Below, piece after piece: positions 19,316 to 51,022 of a stretch of 64,000 nucleotides of DNA. The notes under the pieces are model-generated. The model saw nothing but the letters and a program-made list of their open reading frames with translations. It was not told the origin of the DNA and ran no database searches. The DNA lies in the sequence record MT586120.1, one strand, 5' to 3'. The position numbers and the translations under genes were made by a program. How positions within the stretch are numbered: the first letter of the stretch is position 1; each line of letters opens with the position of its first letter.

Positions 19316-19389
19316 GCCTCAGTAGCTCAGTGGAATAGAGCATCGCTCTTCTAAAGCGTGTTGCGCTGGTTCGAATCCAGCCTGAGGCG
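19316..19389 (+). tRNA. tRNA-Arg(TCT)
   Basis: GCCTCAG/CTGAGGC acceptor stem; loop CT-TCT-AA; GCTGG-TTCGAAT-CCAGC T arm. Confidence 0.9.
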
Positions 19390-19415
19390 TCGTCCAATTA
19401 CTAACATATATAACA

Positions 19416-19571
19416 ATGGGATTACTTTCAGAAAGCGATTACACTCACGCAATTCAAGCACTTGAATACTACCTTGAAGTTTGGGGTAGTCAGTTGAGTG
19501 ATGTTGAGTATATGGAAAAGGAAGCTCTTCTCCGTTGGCTCTACATCAGCAAATCAAAACTAAGTAGCTGA
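19416..19571 (+). CDS. Hypothetical 51-aa protein (not in ORF track)
   Basis: MGLLSESDYTHAIQALEYY...KLSS, read manually. Confidence 0.5.
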   Translation: MGLLSESDYTHAIQALEYYLEVWGSQLSDVEYMEKEALLRWLYISKSKLSS

Positions 19572-19629
19572 TTACACAAGACGATCATCCATATTTACGC
19601 TATACTATCCACATACACAACAAAGACAG

Positions 19630-19821
19630 ATGGCTAAGCAACTCCGTATGGATCTCATTGATGAGTATTACAAGCTATACCGTGAGCGGACTCTATGCCG
19701 TCACACCAAAGATTTTAGAGACAACTACGAAAAGATTAGTGAGCTGTGGGTAGATTTTTCAGAAGAAGAGCGTATCGCAATCAATATACGCTTCATCCAA
19801 GACAACTTGAATAAGTTCTAA
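19630..19821 (+). CDS. Hypothetical protein
   Basis: 63-aa ORF between tRNA genes. Confidence 0.55.
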   Translation: MAKQLRMDLIDEYYKLYRERTLCRHTKDFRDNYEKISELWVDFSEEERIAINIRFIQDNLNKF

Positions 19822-19850
19822 TCTTGTGATATAATACGGTCAACAGACCT

Positions 19851-19923
19851 GCTCCTTTAGCTCTCTGGTGAAAGCACTCCGCTCATAACGGAAGAAAGGT
19901 CAGTTCGATCCTGACAAGGAGCA
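19851..19923 (+). tRNA. tRNA with CAT anticodon (elongator Met or Ile2)
   Basis: GCTCCTT/AAGGAGC acceptor stem; loop CT-CAT-AA; lacks the three G-C pairs of initiator tRNA; own promoter TTGAAT-17-TATAAT at 19807-19835. Confidence 0.85.
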
Positions 19924-19964
19924 TTGACAATCATCACCTTCTCTGGTATGATTGTTTCATCTTC

Positions 19965-20037
19965 GGGGAATTAGCTCAGTTGGTAGAGCGCCTGCTTTGC
20001 AAGCAGGATGTCAACGGTTCGAGTCCGTTATTCTCCA
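19965..20037 (+). tRNA. tRNA-Ala(TGC)
   Basis: GGGGAAT/ATTCTCC acceptor with G3:U70; loop TT-TGC-AA. Confidence 0.95.
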
Positions 20038-20077
20038 TTGACAATCATCACCTTCTCTGGTATGATTGTCTCATCTT

Positions 20078-20149
20078 CGGGGTGTAGCGCAGCGGTAGCG
20101 CATCGCTTTTGGGAAGCGAGGGTCGCAGGTTCGATCCCTGCCACCCCGA
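20078..20149 (+). tRNA. tRNA-Pro(TGG)
   Basis: CGGGGTG/CACCCCG acceptor stem; loop TT-TGG-GA. Confidence 0.93.
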
Positions 20150-20187
20150 TTGACAATCATCACCTTCTCTGGTATGATTGTCGCATA

Positions 20188-20314
20188 AGAGAAGCACCTG
20201 TTAGGATGGTGGTCGCCTAGAATTCAAGGTGGCAGAGGCGGATTACCTCCCGTCCGAGACGAAGCGTTTAAGTTAGTCCTTTGGTAAATGGCAGTTCAAA
20301 TCTGCCCTTCTCTT
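20188..20314 (+). ncRNA. tRNA-like RNA with acceptor stem, T arm and expanded interior
   Basis: AGAGAAG/CTTCTCT stem and GGCAG-TTCAAAT-CTGCC T arm enclosing about 95 nt with at least four hairpins; no canonical anticodon loop. Confidence 0.7.
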
Positions 20315-20320
20315 AAAAAT

Positions 20321-20405
20321 GGAGAGGTGGTCGAGTGGTTTATGGCTCTGGTCTTGAAAACCAGCGAGGTGAAAGCCTCCGTGAGTTCAAATCTCACCCT
20401 CTCCG
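20321..20405 (+). tRNA. tRNA-Ser(TGA)
   Basis: GGAGAGG/CCTCTCC acceptor stem; loop CT-TGA-AA; long variable arm. Confidence 0.95.
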
Positions 20406-20409
20406 CTTT

Positions 20410-20482
20410 GCCTTTGTAGCTCAGTTGGTAGAGCGCGGCTTTTGTAAAGCCGATGTCGCAAGTTCAAATCTTGTCGAAGGCT
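20410..20482 (+). tRNA. tRNA-Thr(TGT)
   Basis: GCCTTTG/CGAAGGC acceptor stem; loop TT-TGT-AA. Confidence 0.93.
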
Positions 20483-20512
20483 TCTATGTATATCATATAC
20501 ATAGTTTTGAAT

Positions 20513-20586
20513 GGGGGATTAGTTCAGTGGCAAAACACCCGCCTCCGACGCGGGAGTCATCGGTTCGAGTCCGTTATTCTCCACCA
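20513..20586 (+). tRNA. tRNA with CCG (Arg) anticodon on an Ala-type body; CCA encoded
   Basis: GGGGGAT/ATTCTCC-A-CCA acceptor with G3:U70; CCCGC-CTCCGAC-GCGGG anticodon arm. Confidence 0.8.
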
Positions 20587-20591
20587 ACCAT

Positions 20592-20664
20592 TGCTCTGTA
20601 ATTCAATCGGTAGAATGCCAAGCTGTTAACTTGGAGGTTGCAGGTTCGAGTCCTGCCGGAGCAG
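20592..20664 (+). tRNA. tRNA-Asn(GTT)
   Basis: TGCTCTG/CGGAGCA acceptor stem; loop CT-GTT-AA. Confidence 0.93.
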
Positions 20665-37727: not shown

Positions 37728-37966
37728 TGAAAACATTACTAGAACGCGAAGGTTACAGGTTTGTCGAAGCTGGTATTATCGAACTAAATGGTAAGCCAGA
37801 TTATCGTCTCCAAAAACAAGACTTCTATACGAAGCGTTGGAATGACGAGTATCTATTCGATAATCAAATGCAATGTAGTATTGCTATGGAAGATATAGAG
37901 TATGCAAAATGGCTCTGTGGTGATCCAGCATACGTGAGAGATGTAGTAGTTAGTCCATATAACTAG
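37727..37966 (+). CDS. Conserved cyanophage hypothetical protein
   Basis: MKTLLEREGYRFVEAGIIELNGKPDYRLQK. Confidence 0.7.
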   Translation: MKTLLEREGYRFVEAGIIELNGKPDYRLQKQDFYTKRWNDEYLFDNQMQCSIAMEDIEYAKWLCGDPAYVRDVVVSPYN

Positions 37967-38018
37967 TCTCGGTAAGACTATAAAAGAGACCTAACCGAGT
38001 CCTCTTACTTTTACTCCA

Positions 38019-38243
38019 ATGAAAGCCACATCTTTTTTACGCTACATCGGAAATACATTACTCGTAATAGGACATTTCACACTACTCTGGGGAAGCACAG
38101 AGCCTGCATTAATTATCAAAATCATTGGCGGTGCGCTTATTCTTCCCTTTGCCGTAGGTTTAGCTCTATGGGATGTAGTTGCCTTAGAGTTAGTCTTTGG
38201 TTCTATGGACGTTACTAAATTGTATCAAGTCCTAGTTTCTTAG
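38019..38243 (+). CDS. Small membrane protein
   Basis: Two to three hydrophobic helices. Confidence 0.6.
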   Translation: MKATSFLRYIGNTLLVIGHFTLLWGSTEPALIIKIIGGALILPFAVGLALWDVVALELVFGSMDVTKLYQVLVS

Positions 38244-38255
38244 TTCTATAAAAAC

Positions 38256-38422
38256 TAAGTGGTGGAGTCAACTTGACCCTTATGCCCTTGTCGGATGGGC
38301 TTTATAAATGCCGACTGGCGCGTCGTATGCAAAGGTTTCTCACTCTTCCTTAAAGAGTGAGTGGTGCGGATGATTTCATCGCATGGTTTTGCGATTCCAT
38401 TTAAAGATCGTATGGCGAGCAT
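38256..38422 (+). ncRNA. wcaG-RNA-like structured RNA in tandem form
   Basis: Four UGGYG motifs (38260, 38316, 38362, 38413) with intervening hairpins and pseudoknot pairings; lies upstream of the gmd/wcaG island. Identity with the wcaG motif is from recall. Confidence 0.6.
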
Positions 38423-38449
38423 GTTAATATACCCAATCATTTTTTGATG

Positions 38450-38473
38450 CCCCCTTCGGAAAGGGGTTTTTTT
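38450..38473 (+). terminator. Rho-independent terminator
   Basis: CCCC-TTCGGAAA-GGGG followed by T7. Confidence 0.7.
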
Positions 38474-38504
38474 ATGCTATAATATATAATGTATTATTTG
38501 TGTA

Positions 38505-39380
38505 ATGGTAATGTATCATGAACGTATGAAGTTACGAAAAGATGCTTATTCTAAAAAGTTAGACAATGTAACATCGAGGTGCTATTTTGCAAATGGATTT
38601 GCAACTAGGATTAAAAATATTGTAAGTTGCCACAGAATTGCAAATAACGTTCAAGTTTATTGGGATGCAAATTGTAAACCATTTTACTATAAAAAATTAA
38701 ATGAATACTTCCCTGATCTAGTGGAAACCGATGAGTATGTCTCAAAGACATGGAGACAAGGATGGAGATTAGCCACTTTTCCTGGAGAAATTGGGGAAGG
38801 TTTTTCAAATAAAGACGCAATTTTTGAAGAGTTTGATAGTCCAATTGTTATCCCATCTCATGGAAAGGGTCGTTGTATTGATTATGAATATCATAGAATT
38901 CCCCAACCAATTATCGATGACTATCTTAAAATATTCTCTGAGTTGAGAATTAAAGATTCTTTTCTTGAGACTGCGGATAAGTTTGCTAAGGAAAATTTTA
39001 ATTCTGAAACTGTTTCTGTGCATATTAGAAATTGGGTTGACTTTGCACCTAGAGGAAAAATGCACACCCTATCTCCCTTCATTGACTTGATGGCAGAGCA
39101 TCCAACATCAAAGTTTTTTGTTTCTACGGATAGTCCCAATAATATCAAAATCCTAAAAGAAACGTTTGGTGATGATCGCATTATTAGCTATTGTGGAACA
39201 GATCCATCATTTGATGTCTTTATTGATTTACTTCTCTTATCGAAGAATCGTAATTTAATTGGTTCTGTAATGAGCACTTTTAGTGAAGTTGCTTGGTGGT
39301 TAGGTGAAGCTACGGCAAAGGTTAAAATTGCTTATGGTCCCAAGACAATGAAGTATATGTACCCAAAACATCACATTTAA
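38505..39380 (+). CDS. Putative fucosyltransferase-like glycosyltransferase (GT23/O-FucT-like)
   Basis: VSVHIR, FFVSTDS, DLLLLSK and GSVMSTFS motifs. Confidence 0.55.
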   Translation: MVMYHERMKLRKDAYSKKLDNVTSRCYFANGFATRIKNIVSCHRIANNVQVYWDANCKPFYYKKLNEYFPDLVETDEYVSKTWRQGWRLATFPGEIGEGFSNKDAIFEEFDSPIVIPSHGKGRCIDYEYHRIPQPIIDDYLKIFSELRIKDSFLETADKFAKENFNSETVSVHIRNWVDFAPRGKMHTLSPFIDLMAEHPTSKFFVSTDSPNNIKILKETFGDDRIISYCGTDPSFDVFIDLLLLSKNRNLIGSVMSTFSEVAWWLGEATAKVKIAYGPKTMKYMYPKHHI

Positions 39381-39420
39381 ACCATTTGTGCTATAATGTA
39401 TTTGTAGCAATCCATTTGTA

Positions 39421-40422
39421 ATGAAAGTAGCACTTATTACTGGGATCACGGGGCAAGATGGATCTTACCTAGCTGAACTTCTCCTCCAAAAAGGATATAC
39501 AGTTCACGGTATTATCCGTCGTGCTTCTATGATTAACACCCACAGAATTGACCATATCTTTGACCGCATCACTCTCCATTATGGAGACCTTACCGATGCT
39601 TTGAGTATCGTATCTATTATTAAAACAGTTCAACCAGATGAAATCTATAACCTAGGGGCTCAGAGTCACGTTAAGGTTTCATTTGATCAGCCTGAATACA
39701 CAGCACAGACCGACGCATTGGGCACTCTAAGGGTGCTAGAAGCCGTCCGTCTTCTTGGTATGGAATCATACGTAAGAATCTACCAAGCGAGCACCAGTGA
39801 GCTTTATGGGCTAGTTCAGGAGACACCCCAGAAAGAAACCACTCCAATGTATCCACGATCCCCTTATGGAGTTGCTAAACTATATGGGTTCTGGATCATC
39901 AAAAACTACAGGGAAAGCTATGACATACATGCCTCTAGCGGTATTCTATTCAATCACGAAAGCTCACGCAGAGGAGAGACGTTCGTCACACGCAAGATCG
40001 TCCGAGCCTTGTCCCGAATTAGTGTGGGACTCCAAAGTGATCTACAGCTTGGAAACCTCAATGCCCGACGTGACTGGGGACACGCCAAAGACTACGTAGA
40101 GGCTATGTGGTTGATGCTTCAGCAAGAGAAGCCAGATGATTATGTGATCGCAACTGGTGAGCAGTATTCTGTAAAGGACTTTGTTAATGCTGCAGCACCA
40201 TACTTTGGGTTCAATATTGAATGGAGAGGTGAAGGTCTTGATGAGTTTGGATTCTGTCTCAATACTGGTAGAACAGTTGTAAAAGTCAATCCTAAATATT
40301 TCAGACCCGCAGAAGTAGAAACTCTTCTCGGTGATCCCACTAAAGCAAAGGAAGTTCTTGGATGGACTCCTACTTATACATTTAATGAACTAGTTGAAGA
40401 GATGGTACTTAATGGACAATAA
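39421..40422 (+). CDS. gmd: GDP-mannose 4,6-dehydratase
   Basis: [28 protein letters not shown] and RDWGHAKDY motifs. Confidence 0.97.
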
Positions 40423-41335
40423 TTCCACAGTTGCAATTTTTGGGTCTGGTGGTCTAGCTGGAGGAGCAATCACCAGACAGTTTATAAACAAAAGACATAA
40501 ACTACTACTACCCCGCAGTAAAGATTTAGATTTACGAGAACAAGCTGATGTTCGTGCTTGGTTCAAAGCCAATAAAGTTGATTATGTAATCCTAGCTGCT
40601 GCCCTAGTCGGCGGCATTATGGCTAACAAGACTCGCAAAGCGGAGTTCTTACACGACAATCTAATGATGCAGTGTAATGTAATTGACTCTGCTTACTATT
40701 CAGGTGTTAAGAAGCTCCTATTCCTAGGAACATCTTGCATCTATCCTGCTGGACGCCAACACCCACTAAAAGAAAATGAACTCCTTACGGGGGCTCTTGA
40801 GCCTACTAACGACGCTTACGCCATCGCAAAGATCGCAGGAATCAAACAATGTGACTTCTACAGGGAGCAATATGGATTTGATGCTATCTCTATTATGCCT
40901 CCTAATCTATATGGTCCTGGAGACAATTTCCACGAGGGATCAGGTCACGTCCTCGCATCGTTGATGAACCGCTTCCACAACGCCAAGGTGGCTGGTGAAG
41001 CCACTGTAGCTTGCTGGGGTGACGGAACACCTATGAGAGAGTTTCTCTTCTCTGAAGACCTAGCAGAAGCCTGTGCGTTCTTTATGGATAACTACAGTGA
41101 CTACGGTCACGTCAATGTTGGAACTGGTGAAGACATCACCATCAAACACCTAGCAGAGAGTATTGCAAAGGTTGTTGGTTTTGAAGGAGAGATCCTATGG
41201 GACACTTCAAAACCAAATGGAAATCCTCGCAAATTACTTGACAGCACTGTGGCTAATGAGTTAGGATGGAAGCCCAAGACCAGTTTTGAAGATGGTCTAC
41301 AGAAAACTTACAACTGGTATTTAAACAATGTATGA
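40412..41335 (+). CDS. fcl: GDP-L-fucose synthase / ColC-like epimerase-reductase
   Basis: [21 protein letters not shown] and [10 protein letters not shown] motifs. Confidence 0.93.
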
Positions 41336-42479
41336 TTGGAAATTAATGGATGATACGGTCACACTTCGTGATCGTATGAAGATGGCTAAGTTTGTTCTAA
41401 CTACTAGCCGACTAACACAAGGACCACAAGTTCGTAAATTTGAGGAGCATTGGAGTGACTGGCTTGGAGTTAAACATTCTCTTTTTGTTAGTAGTGGTAG
41501 TACTGCCAACAGTCTTTTGGTATCTGCTTGGAAAGATCTAAATGATATTCCAGATGGTGCAAAGGTTATTGTTCCTGCCTGCACTTGGGTGACTAACATT
41601 GCACCAATCATTCAAAACAATCTAACCCCAGTATTTTGTGATATCAATCTAAAGGACTTTAGCTTTGATATTAGTTCTCTTCAGACTATTGCATGTGAGC
41701 ATAAAGATATCCGGGCAATCTTCGTCACACACCTACTAGGTTTCCCTGCACGGGTAGAGGAGTTTCATAAGATCTTCCCTAACGCAGACATCCTAGAAGA
41801 CGTTTGCGAGAGCCACGGTGCCGTTATTGAAGGTGGGACTATGGCTGGTACATATGATGTAGGAGGGACATTCAGCTTCTACTTTGGTCATCATATGACT
41901 ACTGTTGAGGGTGGCATGGTATCCACTAACAATAGTGATATGTATGACTTGATGCGTATGAAGCGCTCTCACGGTTTATCTCGTGAGTCGGTTCATTCTA
42001 AAGAGTATGCGAAGATGTATCCCGAGATCAATCCACAGTTCCTCTTTATGACTGATGGTTATAACTTCCGTAATAATGAGATTGGTGCTGTATTGGGTCA
42101 GTCTCAACTAAAGCGTTTGGATAATATGATCGTCAAGCGTAATGATAATTATAAGACATACTTCGAGATTGTATCTCTATACTCCCATCTATTCCATGTT
42201 CCTGCTTACATTCCAAATCGTATTAGTAGCTTCTGCTTCCCTCTAATCTCTAGGGACAAAGCAACTCATCTAAGACTACAGGAGTTGTTGACTGAGTATC
42301 GTGTAGAGTATCGCCCAGTTGTAGGTGGAAACTTACTCAAGCAGCCTTTCTTATCTGCTTATCACGCAGACTGCCCTAACGCAGACATCCTCCACGACCG
42401 TGGATTGTATGTTGGAAACAGTCACTTTGTTGGTGTAAGCCACTTACTAATGCTTGAAGAAATTTTGGAGCAACTTTGA
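41328..42479 (+). CDS. PLP-dependent DegT-family enzyme of ColD type (His in place of catalytic Lys)
   Basis: VSSGSTAN, EDVCESHG and SFYFGHHMTTVEGG motifs; 383 aa. Confidence 0.85.
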   Translation: MYDWKLMDDTVTLRDRMKMAKFVLTTSRLTQGPQVRKFEEHWSDWLGVKHSLFVSSGSTANSLLVSAWKDLNDIPDGAKVIVPACTWVTNIAPIIQNNLTPVFCDINLKDFSFDISSLQTIACEHKDIRAIFVTHLLGFPARVEEFHKIFPNADILEDVCESHGAVIEGGTMAGTYDVGGTFSFYFGHHMTTVEGGMVSTNNSDMYDLMRMKRSHGLSRESVHSKEYAKMYPEINPQFLFMTDGYNFRNNEIGAVLGQSQLKRLDNMIVKRNDNYKTYFEIVSLYSHLFHVPAYIPNRISSFCFPLISRDKATHLRLQELLTEYRVEYRPVVGGNLLKQPFLSAYHADCPNADILHDRGLYVGNSHFVGVSHLLMLEEILEQL

Positions 42480-42480
42480 T

Positions 42481-43275
42481 ATGACTATTTCTTTTAATTA
42501 TTTGGGTAACCTGGGACACTTGGGAAACCAAATGTTTCAGTATGCCGCATTGATGGGTCTTAGCTCCAAGTATAATAGAACCTTTTGTATTCCACATCCC
42601 GATACATTTTCAACTGCGAGTTATCAAGAAAATAGAAGCAGTATCTATAGCGCCTTTGATATCAAACCTCCGCATGTTGGGATGAGTAAATTCAAACCAG
42701 TTTCAGAGGCACACTTTCATTTTGATAACAACTTATTTGAGAACCTTCCACCCCAAGATATTGATCTTCGTGGATACTTTCAATGTGAAAAGTGGTTTAA
42801 GCATATTGAAGATGATGTGAGAAAGGCATTCACATTCAAGCCCGAGTATATGGAAGTAGCTCAGTTGATGCGAGATCAGTTAGATGGTGAAGTAATTTCT
42901 CTTCATATTAGAAGAACAGATTACATCACCAACCCAAATCATTACTGTATGCATATGGGTTACTATTTGAAAGCATTAAAAGTTATGCCTTCTGAGCCAA
43001 AGGTAATCATTTTTAGTGATGATACTGAATGGGCAATGGATCAGAAAGAGTTTCCTGATGATAGGTTCCTTGTATCCGAGACAAATTGTCCATACACAGA
43101 TATGGCTCTGATGACTTTATGCGACTACCACATCAATGCAAACAGCTCCTTCTCTTGGTGGGGTTCTTGGCTATCTAACAGCAAGAAAGTAACAGCTCCA
43201 AGTGATTGGTTTTCTGGTCCACTAACTAGTAATAACTTATCTGATATTTATTGTGATGGATGGGAAGTAATCTAA
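42481..43275 (+). CDS. Alpha-1,2-fucosyltransferase-like GT11 (copy 2)
   Basis: GHLGNQMFQYA, SLHIRRTDY and ANSSFSWWG motifs. Confidence 0.88.
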   Translation: MTISFNYLGNLGHLGNQMFQYAALMGLSSKYNRTFCIPHPDTFSTASYQENRSSIYSAFDIKPPHVGMSKFKPVSEAHFHFDNNLFENLPPQDIDLRGYFQCEKWFKHIEDDVRKAFTFKPEYMEVAQLMRDQLDGEVISLHIRRTDYITNPNHYCMHMGYYLKALKVMPSEPKVIIFSDDTEWAMDQKEFPDDRFLVSETNCPYTDMALMTLCDYHINANSSFSWWGSWLSNSKKVTAPSDWFSGPLTSNNLSDIYCDGWEVI

Positions 43276-44045
43276 TGGGAAAAAATTTAGTATGTCAGAT
43301 CTTTTTTGATAAAAAATTGATTACTGATTATAAAGTTCATGAAAAAGATCAGACAAGAGGTGAGGTTGTAACATCTAAACATTTAGATAATGAGTTGTTT
43401 CAACATTCTCAAATACTTGCTAAAAGATACGCAGAGCGTGTAGGTGCGGATTACATCCTATTTGATAAACCACATATCAATTTTTATAATCCATCTCAAG
43501 AAAGATTTAGATTGATGGAAGAAGACCATTGGGCAGAGACATATGATAATATATTATATGTTGACTGTGATGCGTTTATCTACAACGAATGCCCCAATAT
43601 CTTTGAGGAGTATCCACAAGAAAATTTAAGGATTGCTAGGGATATGAACCCAGCTATTCCTAATCAGGAGAATGTAATTGTTAGTGAGGTTGGTCTTGAT
43701 AAAGTGCGCCAATCATATTTCAATGCTGGAATTCTATTGATGCACTCATCCACACTTAGGGAATTAAAAAAGGTCATCAAATATAAGGAAAGATTTTCTC
43801 TCTTACCTTATGGTGATCAGTCCGAGTTAAATTACTGCACATTGAAGTATGACATCCCCCATACAGTAATGGACCAAAGATTCAACTCATATGACAGAGA
43901 TGCATTTATCGGTCATCTATACGGTACGCAAAAGTTTGATGGACTATTCCATAGTGCATATCACCTGAAGAAAGCTAAAGAGCAAGCACTAGGTATCAAA
44001 CCGAAGAAAAAGAAGCTACCATTCACAGTAAAAACTAATTATTAA
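43275..44045 (+). CDS. Glycosyltransferase, GT8-like
   Basis: YVDCD (DxD), YFNAG and GDQSELN motifs. Confidence 0.75.
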   Translation: MGKNLVCQIFFDKKLITDYKVHEKDQTRGEVVTSKHLDNELFQHSQILAKRYAERVGADYILFDKPHINFYNPSQERFRLMEEDHWAETYDNILYVDCDAFIYNECPNIFEEYPQENLRIARDMNPAIPNQENVIVSEVGLDKVRQSYFNAGILLMHSSTLRELKKVIKYKERFSLLPYGDQSELNYCTLKYDIPHTVMDQRFNSYDRDAFIGHLYGTQKFDGLFHSAYHLKKAKEQALGIKPKKKKLPFTVKTNY

Positions 44046-44049
44046 ACCA

Positions 44050-44619
44050 ATGACTGTTGATGTAAACTATTGGAGTACTTTCTACTCATCAAATCACACT
44101 CTAGATTCCTCCAACTTCTGTAGGTTTGTATTAGAGTACTTTAAAAATCAGTCTTCACTACGCATCCTAGATGCTGGCTGTGGTAATGGTAGAGATAGCT
44201 ATGCCCTATCCAAATTACACATAGTAACTGGTATAGATACTGCCGACTATGTTCCTGAGTCAACAGAGACTTGCTCATTTGAGACTGGAGATTTCTGCAC
44301 ACATGATAAAGATTCTTACGATATTGTGTATTCTAGATTTACTCTACACTCAATTACAGATGAGCAACAGGTAGAATTCATCAAGTCTATTGTAAATGCT
44401 GGGACTTTCTTATGCATTGAGTGTAGAAGTGATGGAGACATTGATACTGTAAGGGAGCATGGTGATGACCACTATAGAAACTTTGTAAGCTTTGTTCGCC
44501 TTCAGAGTATATTGTTGGAGAATGGATTTATAGTGCATGTTGCTGAAGAAAGTAGGGGATTTGCACCATACAAAGCAGAAGATCCAGTTTGTGTACGATT
44601 CATTGCGGAGAAAAATTGA
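44050..44619 (+). CDS. Class I SAM-dependent methyltransferase
   Basis: ILDAGCGNGRD and YSRFTLHSI motifs. Confidence 0.88.
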   Translation: MTVDVNYWSTFYSSNHTLDSSNFCRFVLEYFKNQSSLRILDAGCGNGRDSYALSKLHIVTGIDTADYVPESTETCSFETGDFCTHDKDSYDIVYSRFTLHSITDEQQVEFIKSIVNAGTFLCIECRSDGDIDTVREHGDDHYRNFVSFVRLQSILLENGFIVHVAEESRGFAPYKAEDPVCVRFIAEKN

Positions 44620-45149
44620 TGGCAGGTTATCCTGAAAAAGCAGAAAAGCTAAACACCACACTACTCTGGACTCTCGATCTTCTTGAGACTAGAGGTATTG
44701 ATAAGTGGTTTGTATCTTATGGTACTTTATTGGGTTTGATTCGTGATGGATCATGTATTGATGGTGATGATGATGTAGACATCTGCATTGACAAAGATTG
44801 TTGGGATGATGTATATGATCCAATCAAAAAATTGAATAGACTCAATGAGCAGTATGTAAAAGAGAACATTATCATCACCAAAAGAACTGCGACATACTCA
44901 CAAGTAGATTTTTATTGCTGTGATGTAAATGAGCAAGGTGACTTCAATGATACATGGGAAGATGTTATTTGGAGTAGATGCTATAATGAGTCTGACAAAA
45001 TTCCAACCATTGAGTTTCAGGGAAGACATTTGAATGTTCCTCATAATGCAATTGAAAAACTTTCTAAGCGTTATGGTTCTACTTGGAATCAGAGAATCAA
45101 AAGAGGAACTGAAGCCGGAGATGGTTATCGTAAAATAAAAGTATTATGA
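44619..45149 (+). CDS. LicD-family nucleotidyltransferase-fold phosphotransferase
   Basis: YGTLLGLIRDG..IDGDDDVDI motif. Confidence 0.8.
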   Translation: MAGYPEKAEKLNTTLLWTLDLLETRGIDKWFVSYGTLLGLIRDGSCIDGDDDVDICIDKDCWDDVYDPIKKLNRLNEQYVKENIIITKRTATYSQVDFYCCDVNEQGDFNDTWEDVIWSRCYNESDKIPTIEFQGRHLNVPHNAIEKLSKRYGSTWNQRIKRGTEAGDGYRKIKVL

Positions 45150-45964
45150 AAAATGAAGTTATGAGACACGACCTAAAAGACACTACATTTATTATACCTC
45201 TACGCATTGAGAGTGGAGACAGAATGCGTAATGTAATTACTTCATTATGTTATATACTATCAAACTTTGATACTCATATCATTGTAAAGGAGGGTGATAC
45301 CTCTTCTATATTTCTTGAGGATGTTCTTCCACAAGTAAAAGATTTCCTGGAAGTAGATGAGATTCCTAATCTATTACATGTCTTTGAGGACACGAGTGCT
45401 TCTGAGTTCCATAGAACTAGGTATCTTAATGAGATGACTCATATGGCTACAACAAAGGTTGTGGTTAATTATGATTGTGATATCATCCTTCCCGTGGAGT
45501 CCTACATAAAAGCACAGGCAATGATTATTGATGGACCTTCTGATGTGGTCTATCCATATGGATTCGGTAACTATGCTAAAATGGTAACCGTAGATGATTC
45601 AATTGTCTCTGAATTCCTAACTGAAGGATTCAGTATTAATCTCCTAGAAAAAACTACAAAGCTAAACAATGCTCGTTTTGGTTTCTGTCAGTTCTTTGAT
45701 AGAGAGGTTTACATCAGTGGTGGCGGGGAAAACGAAAAGTTCATTGCATATGCTCCTGAAGATGAAGAGAGGGCATTTAGATTTATTACTTTGGGATATA
45801 AAGTAGATCGTATTGATCAATTTGTATATCACCTAGAGCATTCAAGGACACCCAATTCGTGGTATAATAATCCTCATATGCAGAACAATTTTGCCTTATG
45901 GGAAGTTTTACAGAAAATGGACAAGCATCAACTAATTGAGCACTACAACTTATACAATGGATAA
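45146..45964 (+). CDS. Glycosyltransferase (GT-A fold, GT2/GT7-like)
   Basis: VNYDCD, GGENEKFIAYAPEDEE and YHLEH motifs. Confidence 0.78.
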   Translation: MKNEVMRHDLKDTTFIIPLRIESGDRMRNVITSLCYILSNFDTHIIVKEGDTSSIFLEDVLPQVKDFLEVDEIPNLLHVFEDTSASEFHRTRYLNEMTHMATTKVVVNYDCDIILPVESYIKAQAMIIDGPSDVVYPYGFGNYAKMVTVDDSIVSEFLTEGFSINLLEKTTKLNNARFGFCQFFDREVYISGGGENEKFIAYAPEDEERAFRFITLGYKVDRIDQFVYHLEHSRTPNSWYNNPHMQNNFALWEVLQKMDKHQLIEHYNLYNG

Positions 45965-46784
45965 AAACAAAGCAATCGGAAAACTACGAGGAATCCCTAG
46001 GATCTTCTACATAAATCTGGACGACCATACAGAACGTCGTCAGTATATGGAAGACCAGTTTGAATACTGGGGTATTCCTGAGGACAACTATACGAGAGTT
46101 CCTGCCCACGATGGTAGGGGTGATAATGATTTGGGTGATGTCCTAAAAGGTAAGTATCCAGAGCTAATGACTTCCAGTGAAGTTGGATGTACCGTATCAC
46201 ACTTAAAGGCACTTAAGTACTGGGTTGATAACTATCCAGAGGAAGAGTATCTTGTGGTTATGGAAGATGATTGTGACATTTCAACAGCTGGCTACTGGGG
46301 CTTTACATGGAATGATTTTGCGCGTAAAGTACCTTATCACTTTGATGTAATTCAACTTGCCGTCATCAATCCCATTGAGATTAATGTTAAGCTTCATCTG
46401 AGATTCGTCAATGACTTCTCAACTGCCTGCTATATTATCCGTAAGCATCACGCAGAGAAGTTAGTCAAACTTCATTGTCGTGGTGATAAGTATAAGCTTG
46501 ACCAGAACGTTAAGCCTCGTGCTGTTGCTGATGACTTAATCTACAACTCTGGTTTATCCTTTGCTATCCCCCTGTTCTTATATAAGATTGCTTTGGGTTC
46601 TAGCATCCATGATATTCACGTGAATACATTCCACAAAAGTAGTCATGATGGTCTATGGCAGTTCTGGAAAGAACAAGCACCAACCATCCCAGATTGGTCA
46701 CAGTTCTTTGAGTATGATCCATACTATGGGACACTTCCACCCAGCCTAGTTGCTAAACAAGCTATCGAAGACCATAATAAATAA
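45957..46784 (+). CDS. Glycosyltransferase, GT25-like
   Basis: YINLDDHTERR, EVGCTVSH and VMEDD motifs. Confidence 0.8.
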   Translation: MDKNKAIGKLRGIPRIFYINLDDHTERRQYMEDQFEYWGIPEDNYTRVPAHDGRGDNDLGDVLKGKYPELMTSSEVGCTVSHLKALKYWVDNYPEEEYLVVMEDDCDISTAGYWGFTWNDFARKVPYHFDVIQLAVINPIEINVKLHLRFVNDFSTACYIIRKHHAEKLVKLHCRGDKYKLDQNVKPRAVADDLIYNSGLSFAIPLFLYKIALGSSIHDIHVNTFHKSSHDGLWQFWKEQAPTIPDWSQFFEYDPYYGTLPPSLVAKQAIEDHNK

Positions 46785-46822
46785 GGTAGCAGGAACTAAA
46801 AAAATACACTCTTCTTTATATT

Positions 46823-51022
<4,200 letters not shown>

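What the first reader, a model, noticed from the sequence alone, without database searches (positions are those of the whole stretch)
39421..43275. Apparent GDP-colitose pathway: Gmd + Fcl/ColC + His-type ColD + GT11
Seen: gmd, an fcl-like gene, a 383-aa PLP enzyme with SFYFGHHMTTVEGG (His at 41889 where DegT-family aminotransferases have the Schiff-base Lys, as in SFHAIKN), and a GT11 gene, all translationally coupled. Established: this Lys-to-His change marks the 3-dehydratases ColD (GDP-4-keto-6-deoxymannose) and E1 (the larger Fe-S CDP-sugar enzyme); Gmd, ColD and ColC make GDP-colitose, and GT11 enzymes can transfer colitose in O-antigens. Inference: the phage encodes synthesis and transfer of a 3,6-dideoxyhexose rather than only fucose or perosamine.
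Basis: partly seen in the sequence, partly recalled or inferred. Interest (0 to 1): 0.65.

Follow-up and report, generated by a model that had tools for sequence, protein, structure and literature searches.

The report
Cyanophage colitose (3-deoxy-fucose) sugar operon
The marine cyanophage S-CAM7 carries a tightly packed operon that most likely turns the host's GDP-mannose into GDP-colitose (3-deoxy-fucose) as well as GDP-fucose and attaches it to a glycan. The key enzyme, labelled 'aminotransferase' in databases, belongs to a large, mostly viral, uncharacterised branch of the ColD sugar 3-dehydratases.

Summary
The window is Synechococcus phage S-CAM7. It encodes gmd (39421-40422), fcl (40412-41335), a 383-aa DegT-fold enzyme (41328-42479) and a GT11 transferase (42481-43275), overlapping or 1 nt apart. 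Codon 41889 is His, aligned to catalytic His188 of E. coli ColD and to the Schiff-base Lys of ArnB and WecE.

- The enzyme lacks the E1 iron-sulfur cysteine motif.
- Its best solved relative is ColD.
- It falls on the ColD side of the ColD/E1 split (99/93 support).
- It is only 34% identical to ColD and sits in a separate, mostly viral clade.
- In 82 IMG/VR viral contigs, 72 have a true gmd upstream and 67 have fcl directly upstream.

The Fcl-like gene is a canonical cyanophage Fcl, not a ColC orthologue. A relative of phage S-SKS1 differs from it by a clean colD insertion between gmd and fcl, and the two Fcl proteins are 90% identical. One Fcl therefore probably serves both branches, because colitose is 3-deoxy-fucose.

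The product, the donor that GT11 uses and the acceptor are inferred, not shown. A wcaG RNA motif leads the operon. I found no paper on phage colitose synthesis.

The parts
38331..38426 (+). wcaG RNA motif (RF01761), a candidate cis-regulatory leader of the sugar operon. A weaker second copy lies at 38177-38274.
   Evidence: 77.1 bits against a gathering score of 42. The second copy scores 26.7 bits, E 0.023. A contig from a marine RNA library joins 38422 directly to 39385, placing the motif just before gmd in a relative.
38505..39380 (+). 291-aa ORF of unknown function between the wcaG RNA and gmd.
   Evidence: No Pfam or NCBIfam hit. PHROG 32718, unknown function. Absent in a related contig (joint 38422 to 39385).
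39421..40422 (+). GDP-mannose 4,6-dehydratase (Gmd).
   Evidence: TIGR01472, 539.7 bits (cut-off 415). PDB Gmd entries 7kf3 at 494 bits and E. coli 1db3 at 477 bits.
40412..41335 (+). Fcl-type GDP-4-keto-6-deoxymannose epimerase/reductase. It is the proposed terminal enzyme for both GDP-L-fucose and GDP-L-colitose.
   Evidence: 48% identical to E. coli Fcl and 39% to E. coli O55 ColC. PDB GDP-fucose synthetase 1bsv, 312 bits. Groups with cyanophage Fcl, not with ColC. It is the only Fcl-like gene in the phage record.
41328..42479 (+). ColD-like PLP/PMP-dependent GDP-4-keto-6-deoxy-D-mannose 3-dehydratase (383 aa). The catalytic His188 codon is at 41889-41891.
   Evidence: Best PDB match is ColD 2gms, E 1.6e-49; E1 scores 117 bits. 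His at the Lys position. The E1 Cys motif is absent. Tree placement. Linkage to gmd and fcl in viral contigs.
42481..43275 (+). GT11 glycosyltransferase, candidate alpha-1,2-colitosyl/fucosyltransferase.
   Evidence: PF01531, 83.7 bits. 27% identical to E. coli O55 WbgN, E 2e-24, with the HxRRxD and SSFSWWG motifs aligned. Directly follows colD in ACG-2014f and in contigs L099, L101 and L103.
43275..46784 (+). Rest of the glycan island. It holds a GT8-like protein (43275-44045), a SAM methyltransferase (44050-44619), a LicD-like protein (44619-45149), a galactosyltransferase-like protein (45146-45964) and a GT25 protein (46047-46784).
   Evidence: Pfam, NCBIfam and PHROG hits. GenBank gene starts.
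46823..51022 (+). 1399-aa collagen-repeat tail-fibre protein directly downstream. It is a possible acceptor, not a shown one.
   Evidence: PF01391 Collagen, E 1.7e-50. Annotated as tail fiber protein in KU686212.

Best explanation
This is a phage-borne nucleotide-sugar branch pathway that draws on the host's GDP-mannose.

1. Gmd makes GDP-4-keto-6-deoxy-D-mannose.
2. The ColD-like enzyme uses PMP, with His188 as acid/base and no iron-sulfur cluster or reductase partner. It removes the C3 hydroxyl to give GDP-4-keto-3,6-dideoxy-D-mannose. PMP is regenerated from L-glutamate.
3. The single Fcl-type epimerase/reductase converts this product to GDP-L-colitose, which is 3-deoxy-L-fucose. It converts any substrate that escapes the dehydratase to GDP-L-fucose.
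4. The GT11 enzyme transfers the L-sugar, probably alpha-1,2 to a galactose, onto a glycan built by the neighbouring transferases.

A wcaG RNA motif upstream probably regulates the operon.

Shown here: the gene identities, the His, the absent Fe-S motif, the tree position and the gene linkage. Inferred: substrate, product, donor used by GT11, acceptor and biological role.
For: - ColD is the best solved relative (172 bits, against 117 for E1 and 93 or less for aminotransferases), with His188 aligned.
- The E1 motif C-X57-C-X1-C-X7-C is present in two RfbH references. Only its first Cys is found in the phage protein.
- Residues shared with ColD but different in E1: R219, R248, E327, H215 and E161.
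- Careful tree: ColD plus clade A plus clade B are separated from E1 and the aminotransferases at 99/93. Clade A has 99/98 support.
- In 82 IMG/VR loci, 72 have a gmd of at least 50% identity upstream on the same strand, and 67 have fcl at most 50 nt upstream.
- The same cassette occurs in ACG-2014f, a different genus, at 66% amino-acid identity.
- The phage record has no NTP-transferase and only one Fcl.
- L010/L160 and phage S-SKS1 are 87-88% identical in DNA on both sides of a clean colD indel of about 1.17 kb. Their Fcl proteins are 90% identical.
- The GT11 enzymes WbgN and FUT2 both accept GDP-L-Col and GDP-L-Fuc (PMC11987014).
- ColD-family enzymes act on GDP-linked hexose or heptose 4-keto sugars, according to their 4,6-dehydratase partner (PMC10440746).
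Against: - The enzyme is only 34% identical to characterised ColD and lies outside its clade. No member of its clade has been assayed.
- ColD Ser187 is Gly here, although a preprint reports that Ser187 is not conserved among dehydratases.
- The Fcl-like protein is not in the ColC clade and scores below the NCBIfam Fcl cut-off. I have no data showing that a canonical Fcl accepts the 3-deoxy substrate.
- GT11 is detectably linked in only 29 of 82 viral loci.
- No chemical data exist for virions or infected cells.
- The AlphaFold model was poor (pLDDT 69.8) and adds little.
Confidence: 0.6

Rival explanations
1. The enzyme is a real GDP-sugar 3-dehydratase, but the 4-keto-3,6-dideoxy product is not finished by the phage Fcl. 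A host or other reductase would then make a different 3,6-dideoxyhexose, or the keto-sugar would be used as such, while Fcl makes only GDP-fucose.
For: The phage Fcl is of the canonical type and lies outside the ColC clade. ACG-2014f and contig L099 carry an extra SDR gene in the island. In C. jejuni, separate epimerases and reductases set the final configuration.
Against: S-CAM7 has no other SDR in the island and only one Fcl-like gene. In 67 of 82 viral loci fcl directly abuts colD. Chemically, Fcl acting on the 3-deoxy substrate gives exactly colitose (my inference from the known Fcl reaction).
Confidence: 0.15
2. The pathway works on GDP-heptose rather than GDP-mannose and makes a 3,6-dideoxy-heptose, as in Campylobacter jejuni HS:5.
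For: Two examined members of sister clade B (L034, L028) lie among HddA, HddC-GmhA and GmhB-like genes. Some clade-A contigs carry a GHMP kinase and a CTP_transf_like gene nearby. Phage S-SRM01 has SIS, NDP-sugar synthase and phosphatase genes after gmd-fcl. ColD-family enzymes accept heptose substrates.
Against: The S-CAM7 Gmd passes the Gmd equivalog cut-off (539.7 against 415). The heptose-context dehydratase of L028 scores only 175.8 on the same model. The S-CAM7 record has no nucleotidyltransferase, and its island shows no kinase or isomerase.
Confidence: 0.07
3. The enzyme is an E1-type CDP-4-keto-6-deoxy-D-glucose 3-dehydrase, as annotated in GenBank record KU686212.
For: The only NCBIfam model it hits best is RfbH (176 bits). 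The GenBank and JGI labels say so.
Against: 176 bits is far below the RfbH cut-off of 423. Three of the four Fe-S cysteines are missing. At 383 aa it is shorter than the E1 references (437-466 aa). The phage cassette has no rfbF, rfbG or E3 partner but has gmd. The tree separates it from E1.
Confidence: 0.03
4. The enzyme is a sugar aminotransferase, for example a GDP-perosamine synthase, as labelled in RefSeq and PHROGs.
For: DegT-family fold. The labels 'aminotransferase' in NC_031927 and PHROG 3139.
Against: The Schiff-base Lys is replaced by His in this protein and in every relative examined. The aminotransferases are the distant outgroup. According to the review, the His-for-Lys change is what marks the 3-dehydratases.
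Confidence: 0.03
5. The ColD-like gene is a recently acquired passenger with little or no flux, so the operon in effect makes only GDP-fucose.
For: Near-identical phages exist with and without it. Many cyanophages have gmd-fcl alone.
Against: It is conserved at 66% amino-acid identity across two phage genera, with all catalytic residues invariant. At least 579 viral stretches encode relatives. Its coding overlap with neighbours is maintained.
Confidence: 0.05

Closest known systems
ColD, GDP-4-keto-6-deoxy-D-mannose 3-dehydratase of E. coli O55:H7 (PDB 2GMS, 3B8X) and Yersinia pseudotuberculosis
   Same: DegT/fold-type-I scaffold, about 385 aa. His188 replaces the Schiff-base Lys. No Fe-S motif. 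It shares R219, N248, R250, E329 and R331 (ColD numbering). It sits next to an Fcl-like gene and in a cluster with gmd and a GT11 gene (WbgN).
   Different: Only 34% identical. It lies in a separate, strongly supported clade that is mostly viral. Gly replaces Ser187. Its partner reductase is a canonical Fcl, not a ColC-clade enzyme.
C3-dehydratases of Campylobacter jejuni HS:5 and HS:11 (GDP-6-deoxy-4-keto-heptose 3-dehydratase; PMC10440746)
   Same: PLP- and glutamate-dependent removal of the C3 hydroxyl from a GDP-linked 4-keto-6-deoxy sugar. The substrate is set by the partner 4,6-dehydratase.
   Different: Those enzymes are 62-67% identical to ColD, so they lie inside the characterised clade. 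They work on heptoses and use a separate C5-epimerase and C4-reductase.
E1 (RfbH/DdhC/AscC), CDP-6-deoxy-L-threo-D-glycero-4-hexulose 3-dehydrase
   Same: His-type 3-dehydratase of the same superfamily.
   Different: E1 has a [2Fe-2S] motif, needs the reductase E3, is 437-466 aa long and sits with rfbF and rfbG. None of this holds here.
ColC (GDP-L-colitose synthase) and Fcl/WcaG (GDP-L-fucose synthase)
   Same: The phage protein is a full-length homologue of both. The Ser-Cys, YxxxK and His stretches align with those of E. coli Fcl (that these are the catalytic residues is my recollection).
   Different: It clusters with the canonical Fcl of ColD-less cyanophages. E. coli O55 ColC and the Sulfitobacter plasmid homologue form their own clade.
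WbgN, GT11 alpha-1,2-colitosyltransferase of E. coli O55:H7
   Same: GT11 family with the HxRRxD and C-terminal SSFSWWG motifs, encoded in a colitose cluster. GT11 enzymes accept both GDP-Col and GDP-Fuc.
   Different: 27% identical. The acceptor is unknown. There is no solved GT11 relative by sequence.

Membership tests
ColD-type 3-dehydratase | DegT/DnrJ/EryC1 (fold-type I sugar aminotransferase) scaffold of about 390 aa | tested here: met
   PF01041, 192.8 bits. Aligned over residues 18-379 to ColD 2gms, E 1.6e-49. The top Foldseek hits are ColD entries, but the model is poor.
ColD-type 3-dehydratase | Catalytic His in place of the Schiff-base Lys | tested here: met
   His188 (codon 41889) aligns to ColD H188 and to the Lys of ArnB and WecE.
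ColD-type 3-dehydratase | No [2Fe-2S] cysteine motif and so no E3 reductase needed | tested here: met
   Of the E1 cysteines spaced C-X57-C-X1-C-X7-C in two RfbH references, only the first is present.
ColD-type 3-dehydratase | Orthology with biochemically characterised ColD (same clade) | tested here: not met
   34% identity. The characterised clade (E. coli O55 plus a Sulfitobacter plasmid gene) is sister to clades A+B. The phage enzyme is in clade A.
ColD-type 3-dehydratase | Ser187 next to the catalytic His | tested here: not met
   Gly187 in the phage clade and Ala in clade B and E1. A preprint reports that Ser187 is not conserved among dehydratases.
ColD-type 3-dehydratase | Encoded with gmd, which supplies GDP-4-keto-6-deoxymannose | tested here: met
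   gmd lies two genes upstream here. 72 of 82 viral loci have gmd upstream on the same strand.
ColD-type 3-dehydratase | Catalyses C3 deoxygenation of GDP-4-keto-6-deoxy-D-mannose with glutamate-driven PMP recycling | not testable with these tools
   Needs an enzyme assay.
E1 (RfbH) CDP-sugar 3-dehydrase | NCBIfam NF011936 equivalog score of at least 423, the Fe-S motif, and rfbF/rfbG/E3 neighbours | tested here: not met
   176.1 bits. Motif absent. The neighbours are gmd and fcl. True rfbH genes sit with rfbF and rfbG.
ColC (GDP-L-colitose synthase) | Member of the ColC clade that travels with characterised ColD | tested here: not met
   E. coli O55 ColC and the Sulfitobacter S223 homologue form a clade with 99 support. 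The phage protein groups with the Fcl of ColD-less cyanophages.
Fcl (GDP-L-fucose synthase) | NCBIfam NF047922 equivalog cut-off (500 bits) and conserved catalytic residues | tested here: inconclusive
   422.9 bits is below the cut-off. However, it is 48% identical to E. coli Fcl, the Ser-Cys, YxxxK and His stretches align, and it scores 312 bits to PDB 1bsv.
GT11 (alpha-1,2-fucosyl/colitosyltransferases) | PF01531 above the gathering score, and the HxRRxD donor-binding motif | tested here: met
   83.7 bits against 23.9. HIRRTDY aligns with HIRRGDY of WbgN.
Gmd (GDP-mannose 4,6-dehydratase) | TIGR01472 equivalog cut-off | tested here: met
   539.7 bits against 415. 477-494 bits to solved Gmd structures.
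wcaG RNA motif (RF01761) | Rfam gathering score | tested here: met
   77.1 bits against 42, matching the full-length model, at 38331-38426.

The most novel reading that the evidence does not exclude
The colD gene acts as a plug-in switch. It would convert a phage-made fucose cap into a colitose cap on a glycan that decorates the phage's own collagen-like tail fibres. In this reading the GT25 enzyme lays down galactose, GT11 caps it, and in relatives a GT6 enzyme extends it, giving a histo-blood-group-like epitope. Near-identical phages with and without colD would then be glycan serotypes of virions, selected by host receptors, lectins or grazers. This contrasts with a modification of host LPS.
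Probability: 0.15. Interest if true: 0.8.

Novelty: new member of a known kind. Interest (0 to 1): 0.5.

Why it matters
3,6-dideoxyhexoses such as colitose are known as rare bacterial O-antigen sugars. In the library I could search, no paper links colitose to cyanophages or to phage-encoded synthesis.

Here the key enzyme defines a large and mostly viral clade. At least 579 IMG/VR stretches encode relatives, and the gene occurs in at least two cyanomyovirus genera and in an S-SKS1-like phage. RefSeq and PHROGs label it 'aminotransferase', and GenBank labels it a CDP-sugar dehydrase.

Correcting this changes how a common 'auxiliary metabolic gene' island of marine phages is read. These phages appear to choose between fucose and 3-deoxy-fucose on some surface glycan. 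Natural with/without pairs offer a direct experimental handle. The finding also ties the orphan wcaG RNA motif to a defined nucleotide-sugar operon.

Tried and rejected
- Structure prediction. The 14-row alignment gave a poor model (pLDDT 69.8, TM about 0.5 to ColD), so no conclusions about the active site were drawn.
- Structural papers. The ColD and E1 structure papers (PMC2533848, PMC2242600, PMC2782820) are not held. The roles I recalled for ColD R219, N248, R250 and R331 in binding the GDP-sugar rest on memory. Only their conservation was tested.
- GT11 had no solved relative by sequence.
- The 256-aa protein after GT11 is not the GT6 enzyme seen in related contigs. It gives only a weak GT8 hit.
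- Reference genome. No whole genome is held for the window. References were taken from E. coli O55:H7 CB9615 and from two plasmids instead.
- Single-protein scan. A scan of IMG/VR with the single protein found only 3 loci. A scan with an alignment was needed.
- RNA libraries. Contigs from four marine RNA libraries cover parts of gmd, fcl, colD and the colD/GT11 junction. These are assembled contigs from libraries that may hold DNA, so I do not count them as proof of transcription.
- Literature. Searches for colitose plus cyanophage and for cyanophage plus 3-dehydrase found nothing. Twenty-three papers mention both colitose and phage; by title and abstract the 20 listed concern receptors, O-antigens or unrelated uses, none phage-encoded synthesis.
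- Not used. The large representative protein search and complex prediction were not run, because no claim here needs them.


Full report
**Identity of the window.** The stretch 39421-43275 is 100% identical to Synechococcus phage S-CAM7 (MT586120.1) and 99.2-99.5% identical to the other S-CAM7 isolates. S-CAM7 belongs to Kyanoviridae, genus Mazuvirus. GenBank record KU686212 annotates the four genes as GDP-mannose 4,6-dehydratase, GDP-L-fucose synthetase, 'putative CDP-4-keto-6-deoxy-D-glucose-3-dehydrase' and glycosyltransferase family 11. RefSeq calls the third gene 'aminotransferase', and so does PHROG 3139.

**Observation.** The ORFs are as described.
- Gmd passes its equivalog cut-off: TIGR01472, 539.7 bits against 415.
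- The second protein hits the Fcl model at 422.9 bits, below the cut-off of 500.
- The third protein is a DegT-family protein. Its only close NCBIfam model is RfbH, at 176 bits against a cut-off of 423.
- The fourth protein is GT11.
- The DNA at 41889 is CAT, within FSFYFGHHMTTVEGG.
- Gene junctions overlap by 11 and 8 nt, or are 1 nt apart.

**The PLP enzyme.** Against all PDB sequences the best matches are the four E. coli O55 ColD entries (168-172 bits, E about 1e-49). E1 follows at 113-117 bits, and sugar aminotransferases score 93 bits or less. The H188N and H188K ColD mutant entries differ from the query exactly at the first His of GHH. This fixes the alignment of the catalytic residue.

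I took reference genes from annotated records:
- ColD, ColC, WbgN, Gmd and Fcl from E. coli O55:H7 CB9615.
- Two PGAP-named rfbH genes that sit with rfbF and rfbG on plasmids.
- A gmd-fcl-DegT cassette on a Sulfitobacter plasmid.

In a joint alignment the two E1 references share cysteines spaced C-X57-C-X1-C-X7-C. As I recall it, this is the published E1 iron-sulfur motif; the review read confirms that E1 has a four-cysteine [2Fe-2S] motif and that ColD lacks one. The phage protein, ColD and all their relatives keep only the first cysteine. The phage protein shares R219, R248, E327, H215 and E161 with ColD, where E1 differs. ColD Ser187 is Gly in the phage protein.

**Phylogeny.** A 96-row quick tree and a 37-row careful tree agree. 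With E. coli ArnB and WecE as outgroup, E1 branches first. The remaining rows are held together at 99/93 support and form three groups:
- the characterised ColD clade (E. coli O55 plus the Sulfitobacter gene, 100/100);
- clade A, which holds the phage enzyme (99/98);
- clade B (100/99).

Clades A and B are sisters at 100/98. But the enzyme is not an orthologue of characterised ColD: it is 34% identical.

In the two clade B loci whose neighbours I scanned (L034 and L028), the genes alongside are HddA-like, HddC-GmhA-like, GmhB-like and a divergent Gmd-like gene. This points to heptose substrates. It fits the published finding that ColD-family enzymes of C. jejuni dehydrate GDP-6-deoxy-4-keto-heptose (PMC10440746). 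The whole non-E1 group therefore appears to use GDP-linked sugars, with the substrate set by the partner 4,6-dehydratase.

**Linkage.** I analysed 82 viral loci (the 80 kept from this scan plus two).
- 72 carry a gmd of at least 50% identity upstream on the same strand.
- 67 have fcl ending within 50 nt of the colD start.
- 29 have a recognisable GT11 downstream.
- Three of the ten loci without gmd are cut off by the contig end.

The same gmd-fcl-colD-GT11 order, after the peptide deformylase gene and before a tail-fibre gene, is found in ACG-2014f (genus Atlauavirus). There ColD is 66% and Fcl 79% identical. The same order occurs in long cyanophage-like metagenomic contigs. The closest 'bacterial' hit, a Crocinitomicaceae MAG contig (L010), has the same length and match coordinates as an IMG/VR viral contig (L160) and aligns to phage S-SKS1. 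It is therefore most likely a phage contig binned into a MAG. Genuinely cellular members of clade A seem few. One example is L013, on a 2.6-Mb chromosome, with GT11, fcl and gmd beside it.

**The Fcl question.** The phage protein is 48% identical to E. coli Fcl and 39% to E. coli O55 ColC. In a tree of Fcl-like proteins, ColC and the Sulfitobacter homologue next to a ColD-clade gene form their own clade (99 support). The S-CAM7 and ACG-2014f proteins instead sit among the Fcl of cyanophages that have gmd-fcl but no ColD: P-SSM2, S-SRM01, S-SCSM1 and S-SKS1. They do so on a rather long stem branch (0.74).

The most telling comparison is L010/L160 against S-SKS1. The DNA is 87-88% identical on both sides. 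L010 has about 1.17 kb, the colD gene, where S-SKS1 has about 10 nt between gmd and fcl. The two Fcl proteins are 90% identical. A canonical phage Fcl therefore works in both settings.

Colitose is 3-deoxy-L-fucose. The known Fcl chemistry is epimerisation next to the 4-keto group followed by 4-reduction to the L-galacto configuration. Applied to the 3-deoxy substrate it would give colitose. This step is inference.

The S-CAM7 record has one Fcl-like gene and no nucleotidyltransferase. GDP-mannose must therefore come from the host.

**The transferase.** The GT11 protein is 27% identical to WbgN, the O55 colitosyltransferase, with the HxRRxD and C-terminal motifs aligned. Published assays show that both WbgN and human FUT2 use GDP-L-Col and GDP-L-Fuc, so the donor pool decides what is transferred (PMC11987014). 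Adding ColD to a gmd-fcl-GT11 set would thus be enough to change the cap from fucose to colitose.

**Regulation and expression.** A full-length wcaG RNA motif (RF01761, 77 bits) lies at 38331-38426, with a weak second copy upstream. A contig from a marine RNA library joins the motif directly to the start of gmd and skips the 291-aa ORF, which shows the arrangement in a relative. Near-identical DNA occurs in marine viral and seawater metagenomes from at least 11 studies. Contigs from RNA libraries cover parts of gmd, fcl, colD and the colD/GT11 junction. I treat this only as a hint of expression.

**What is not known.** Still unknown are the product, the acceptor (host LPS or another envelope glycan, or the virion) and the benefit to the phage. 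The island continues with a GT8-like, a methyltransferase, a LicD-like, a galactosyltransferase-like and a GT25 gene. It ends at a 1399-aa collagen-repeat tail-fibre gene. Related contigs add GT6 and sulfotransferase genes. Earlier notes of this scan raised virion glycosylation (s1-414856) and a structured RNA array upstream of the cluster (s1-414855). I confirmed only the collagen repeats, the GT25 gene and the wcaG RNA.

**Verdict.** The reading 'GDP-colitose pathway' is the best-supported one, with about 0.8 probability for the 3-dehydratase step on the Gmd product and about 0.6 for the whole chain to transferred colitose. The enzyme belongs to an uncharacterised, mainly viral branch of the ColD family, and its partner is an ordinary Fcl rather than ColC.

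Noticed in passing
window 38177-38426: A full wcaG RNA motif (77 bits) is preceded by a weaker wcaG-like copy (26.7 bits, E 0.023), so the leader may be a tandem array. Another reader of this scan described tandem pseudoknot modules at 37964-38423.
   Followed up: partly
window 38422 to 39385 (run X17, record 10): A contig from a marine RNA library joins the 3' part of the wcaG RNA to the base just before gmd. It skips the 291-aa ORF (962 nt), with 48 other letters in between. This is a related phage that lacks the ORF.
   Followed up: no
L010 (PACT01000001.1) = L160 (IMGVR_UViG_2825980227_000005); L098 (S-SKS1): A contig filed as a Crocinitomicaceae MAG has the same length and match coordinates as an IMG/VR viral contig. 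It is 87-88% identical to cyanophage S-SKS1 apart from a clean colD insertion between gmd and fcl, so it is most likely a phage contig binned into a bacterial MAG.
   Followed up: yes
L096 4924-7336 (Synechococcus phage S-SRM01): In this phage gmd-fcl is followed by a SIS-domain protein, an NDP-sugar synthase and a phosphatase, a set that resembles heptose activation genes. Its 'gmd/fcl' may therefore act on a GDP-heptose.
   Followed up: no
L034 4151-11369; L028 10304-14223: In these two clade B loci the His-type 3-dehydratase sits with an HddA-like kinase, HddC-GmhA or HddC-GmhB fusions, a divergent Gmd-like dehydratase, an Fcl-like reductase and, in L034, a split transketolase. This is a widespread but uncharacterised dideoxy-heptose-like pathway.
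   Followed up: partly
window 45936-51022: A GT25 gene lies directly upstream of a 1399-aa tail-fibre protein with collagen triple-helix repeats (E 1.7e-50). From my own knowledge, animal collagen galactosyltransferases are GT25 enzymes, so fibre glycosylation is worth testing.
   Followed up: no
window 44050-44619: KU686212 annotates this gene as adenylylsulfate kinase. Pfam and NCBIfam hits are only to SAM-dependent methyltransferase domains.
   Followed up: partly
L099, L101, L103 (metagenomic cyanophage-like contigs): Related islands combine GT11 with GT6 and GT25 genes and with sulfotransferases. On known family specificities, these three transferase families could build a histo-blood-group-like Gal/Fuc(Col)/GalNAc epitope.
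   Followed up: no
window 19316-20664: An array of eight tRNA genes found by Rfam.
   Followed up: no
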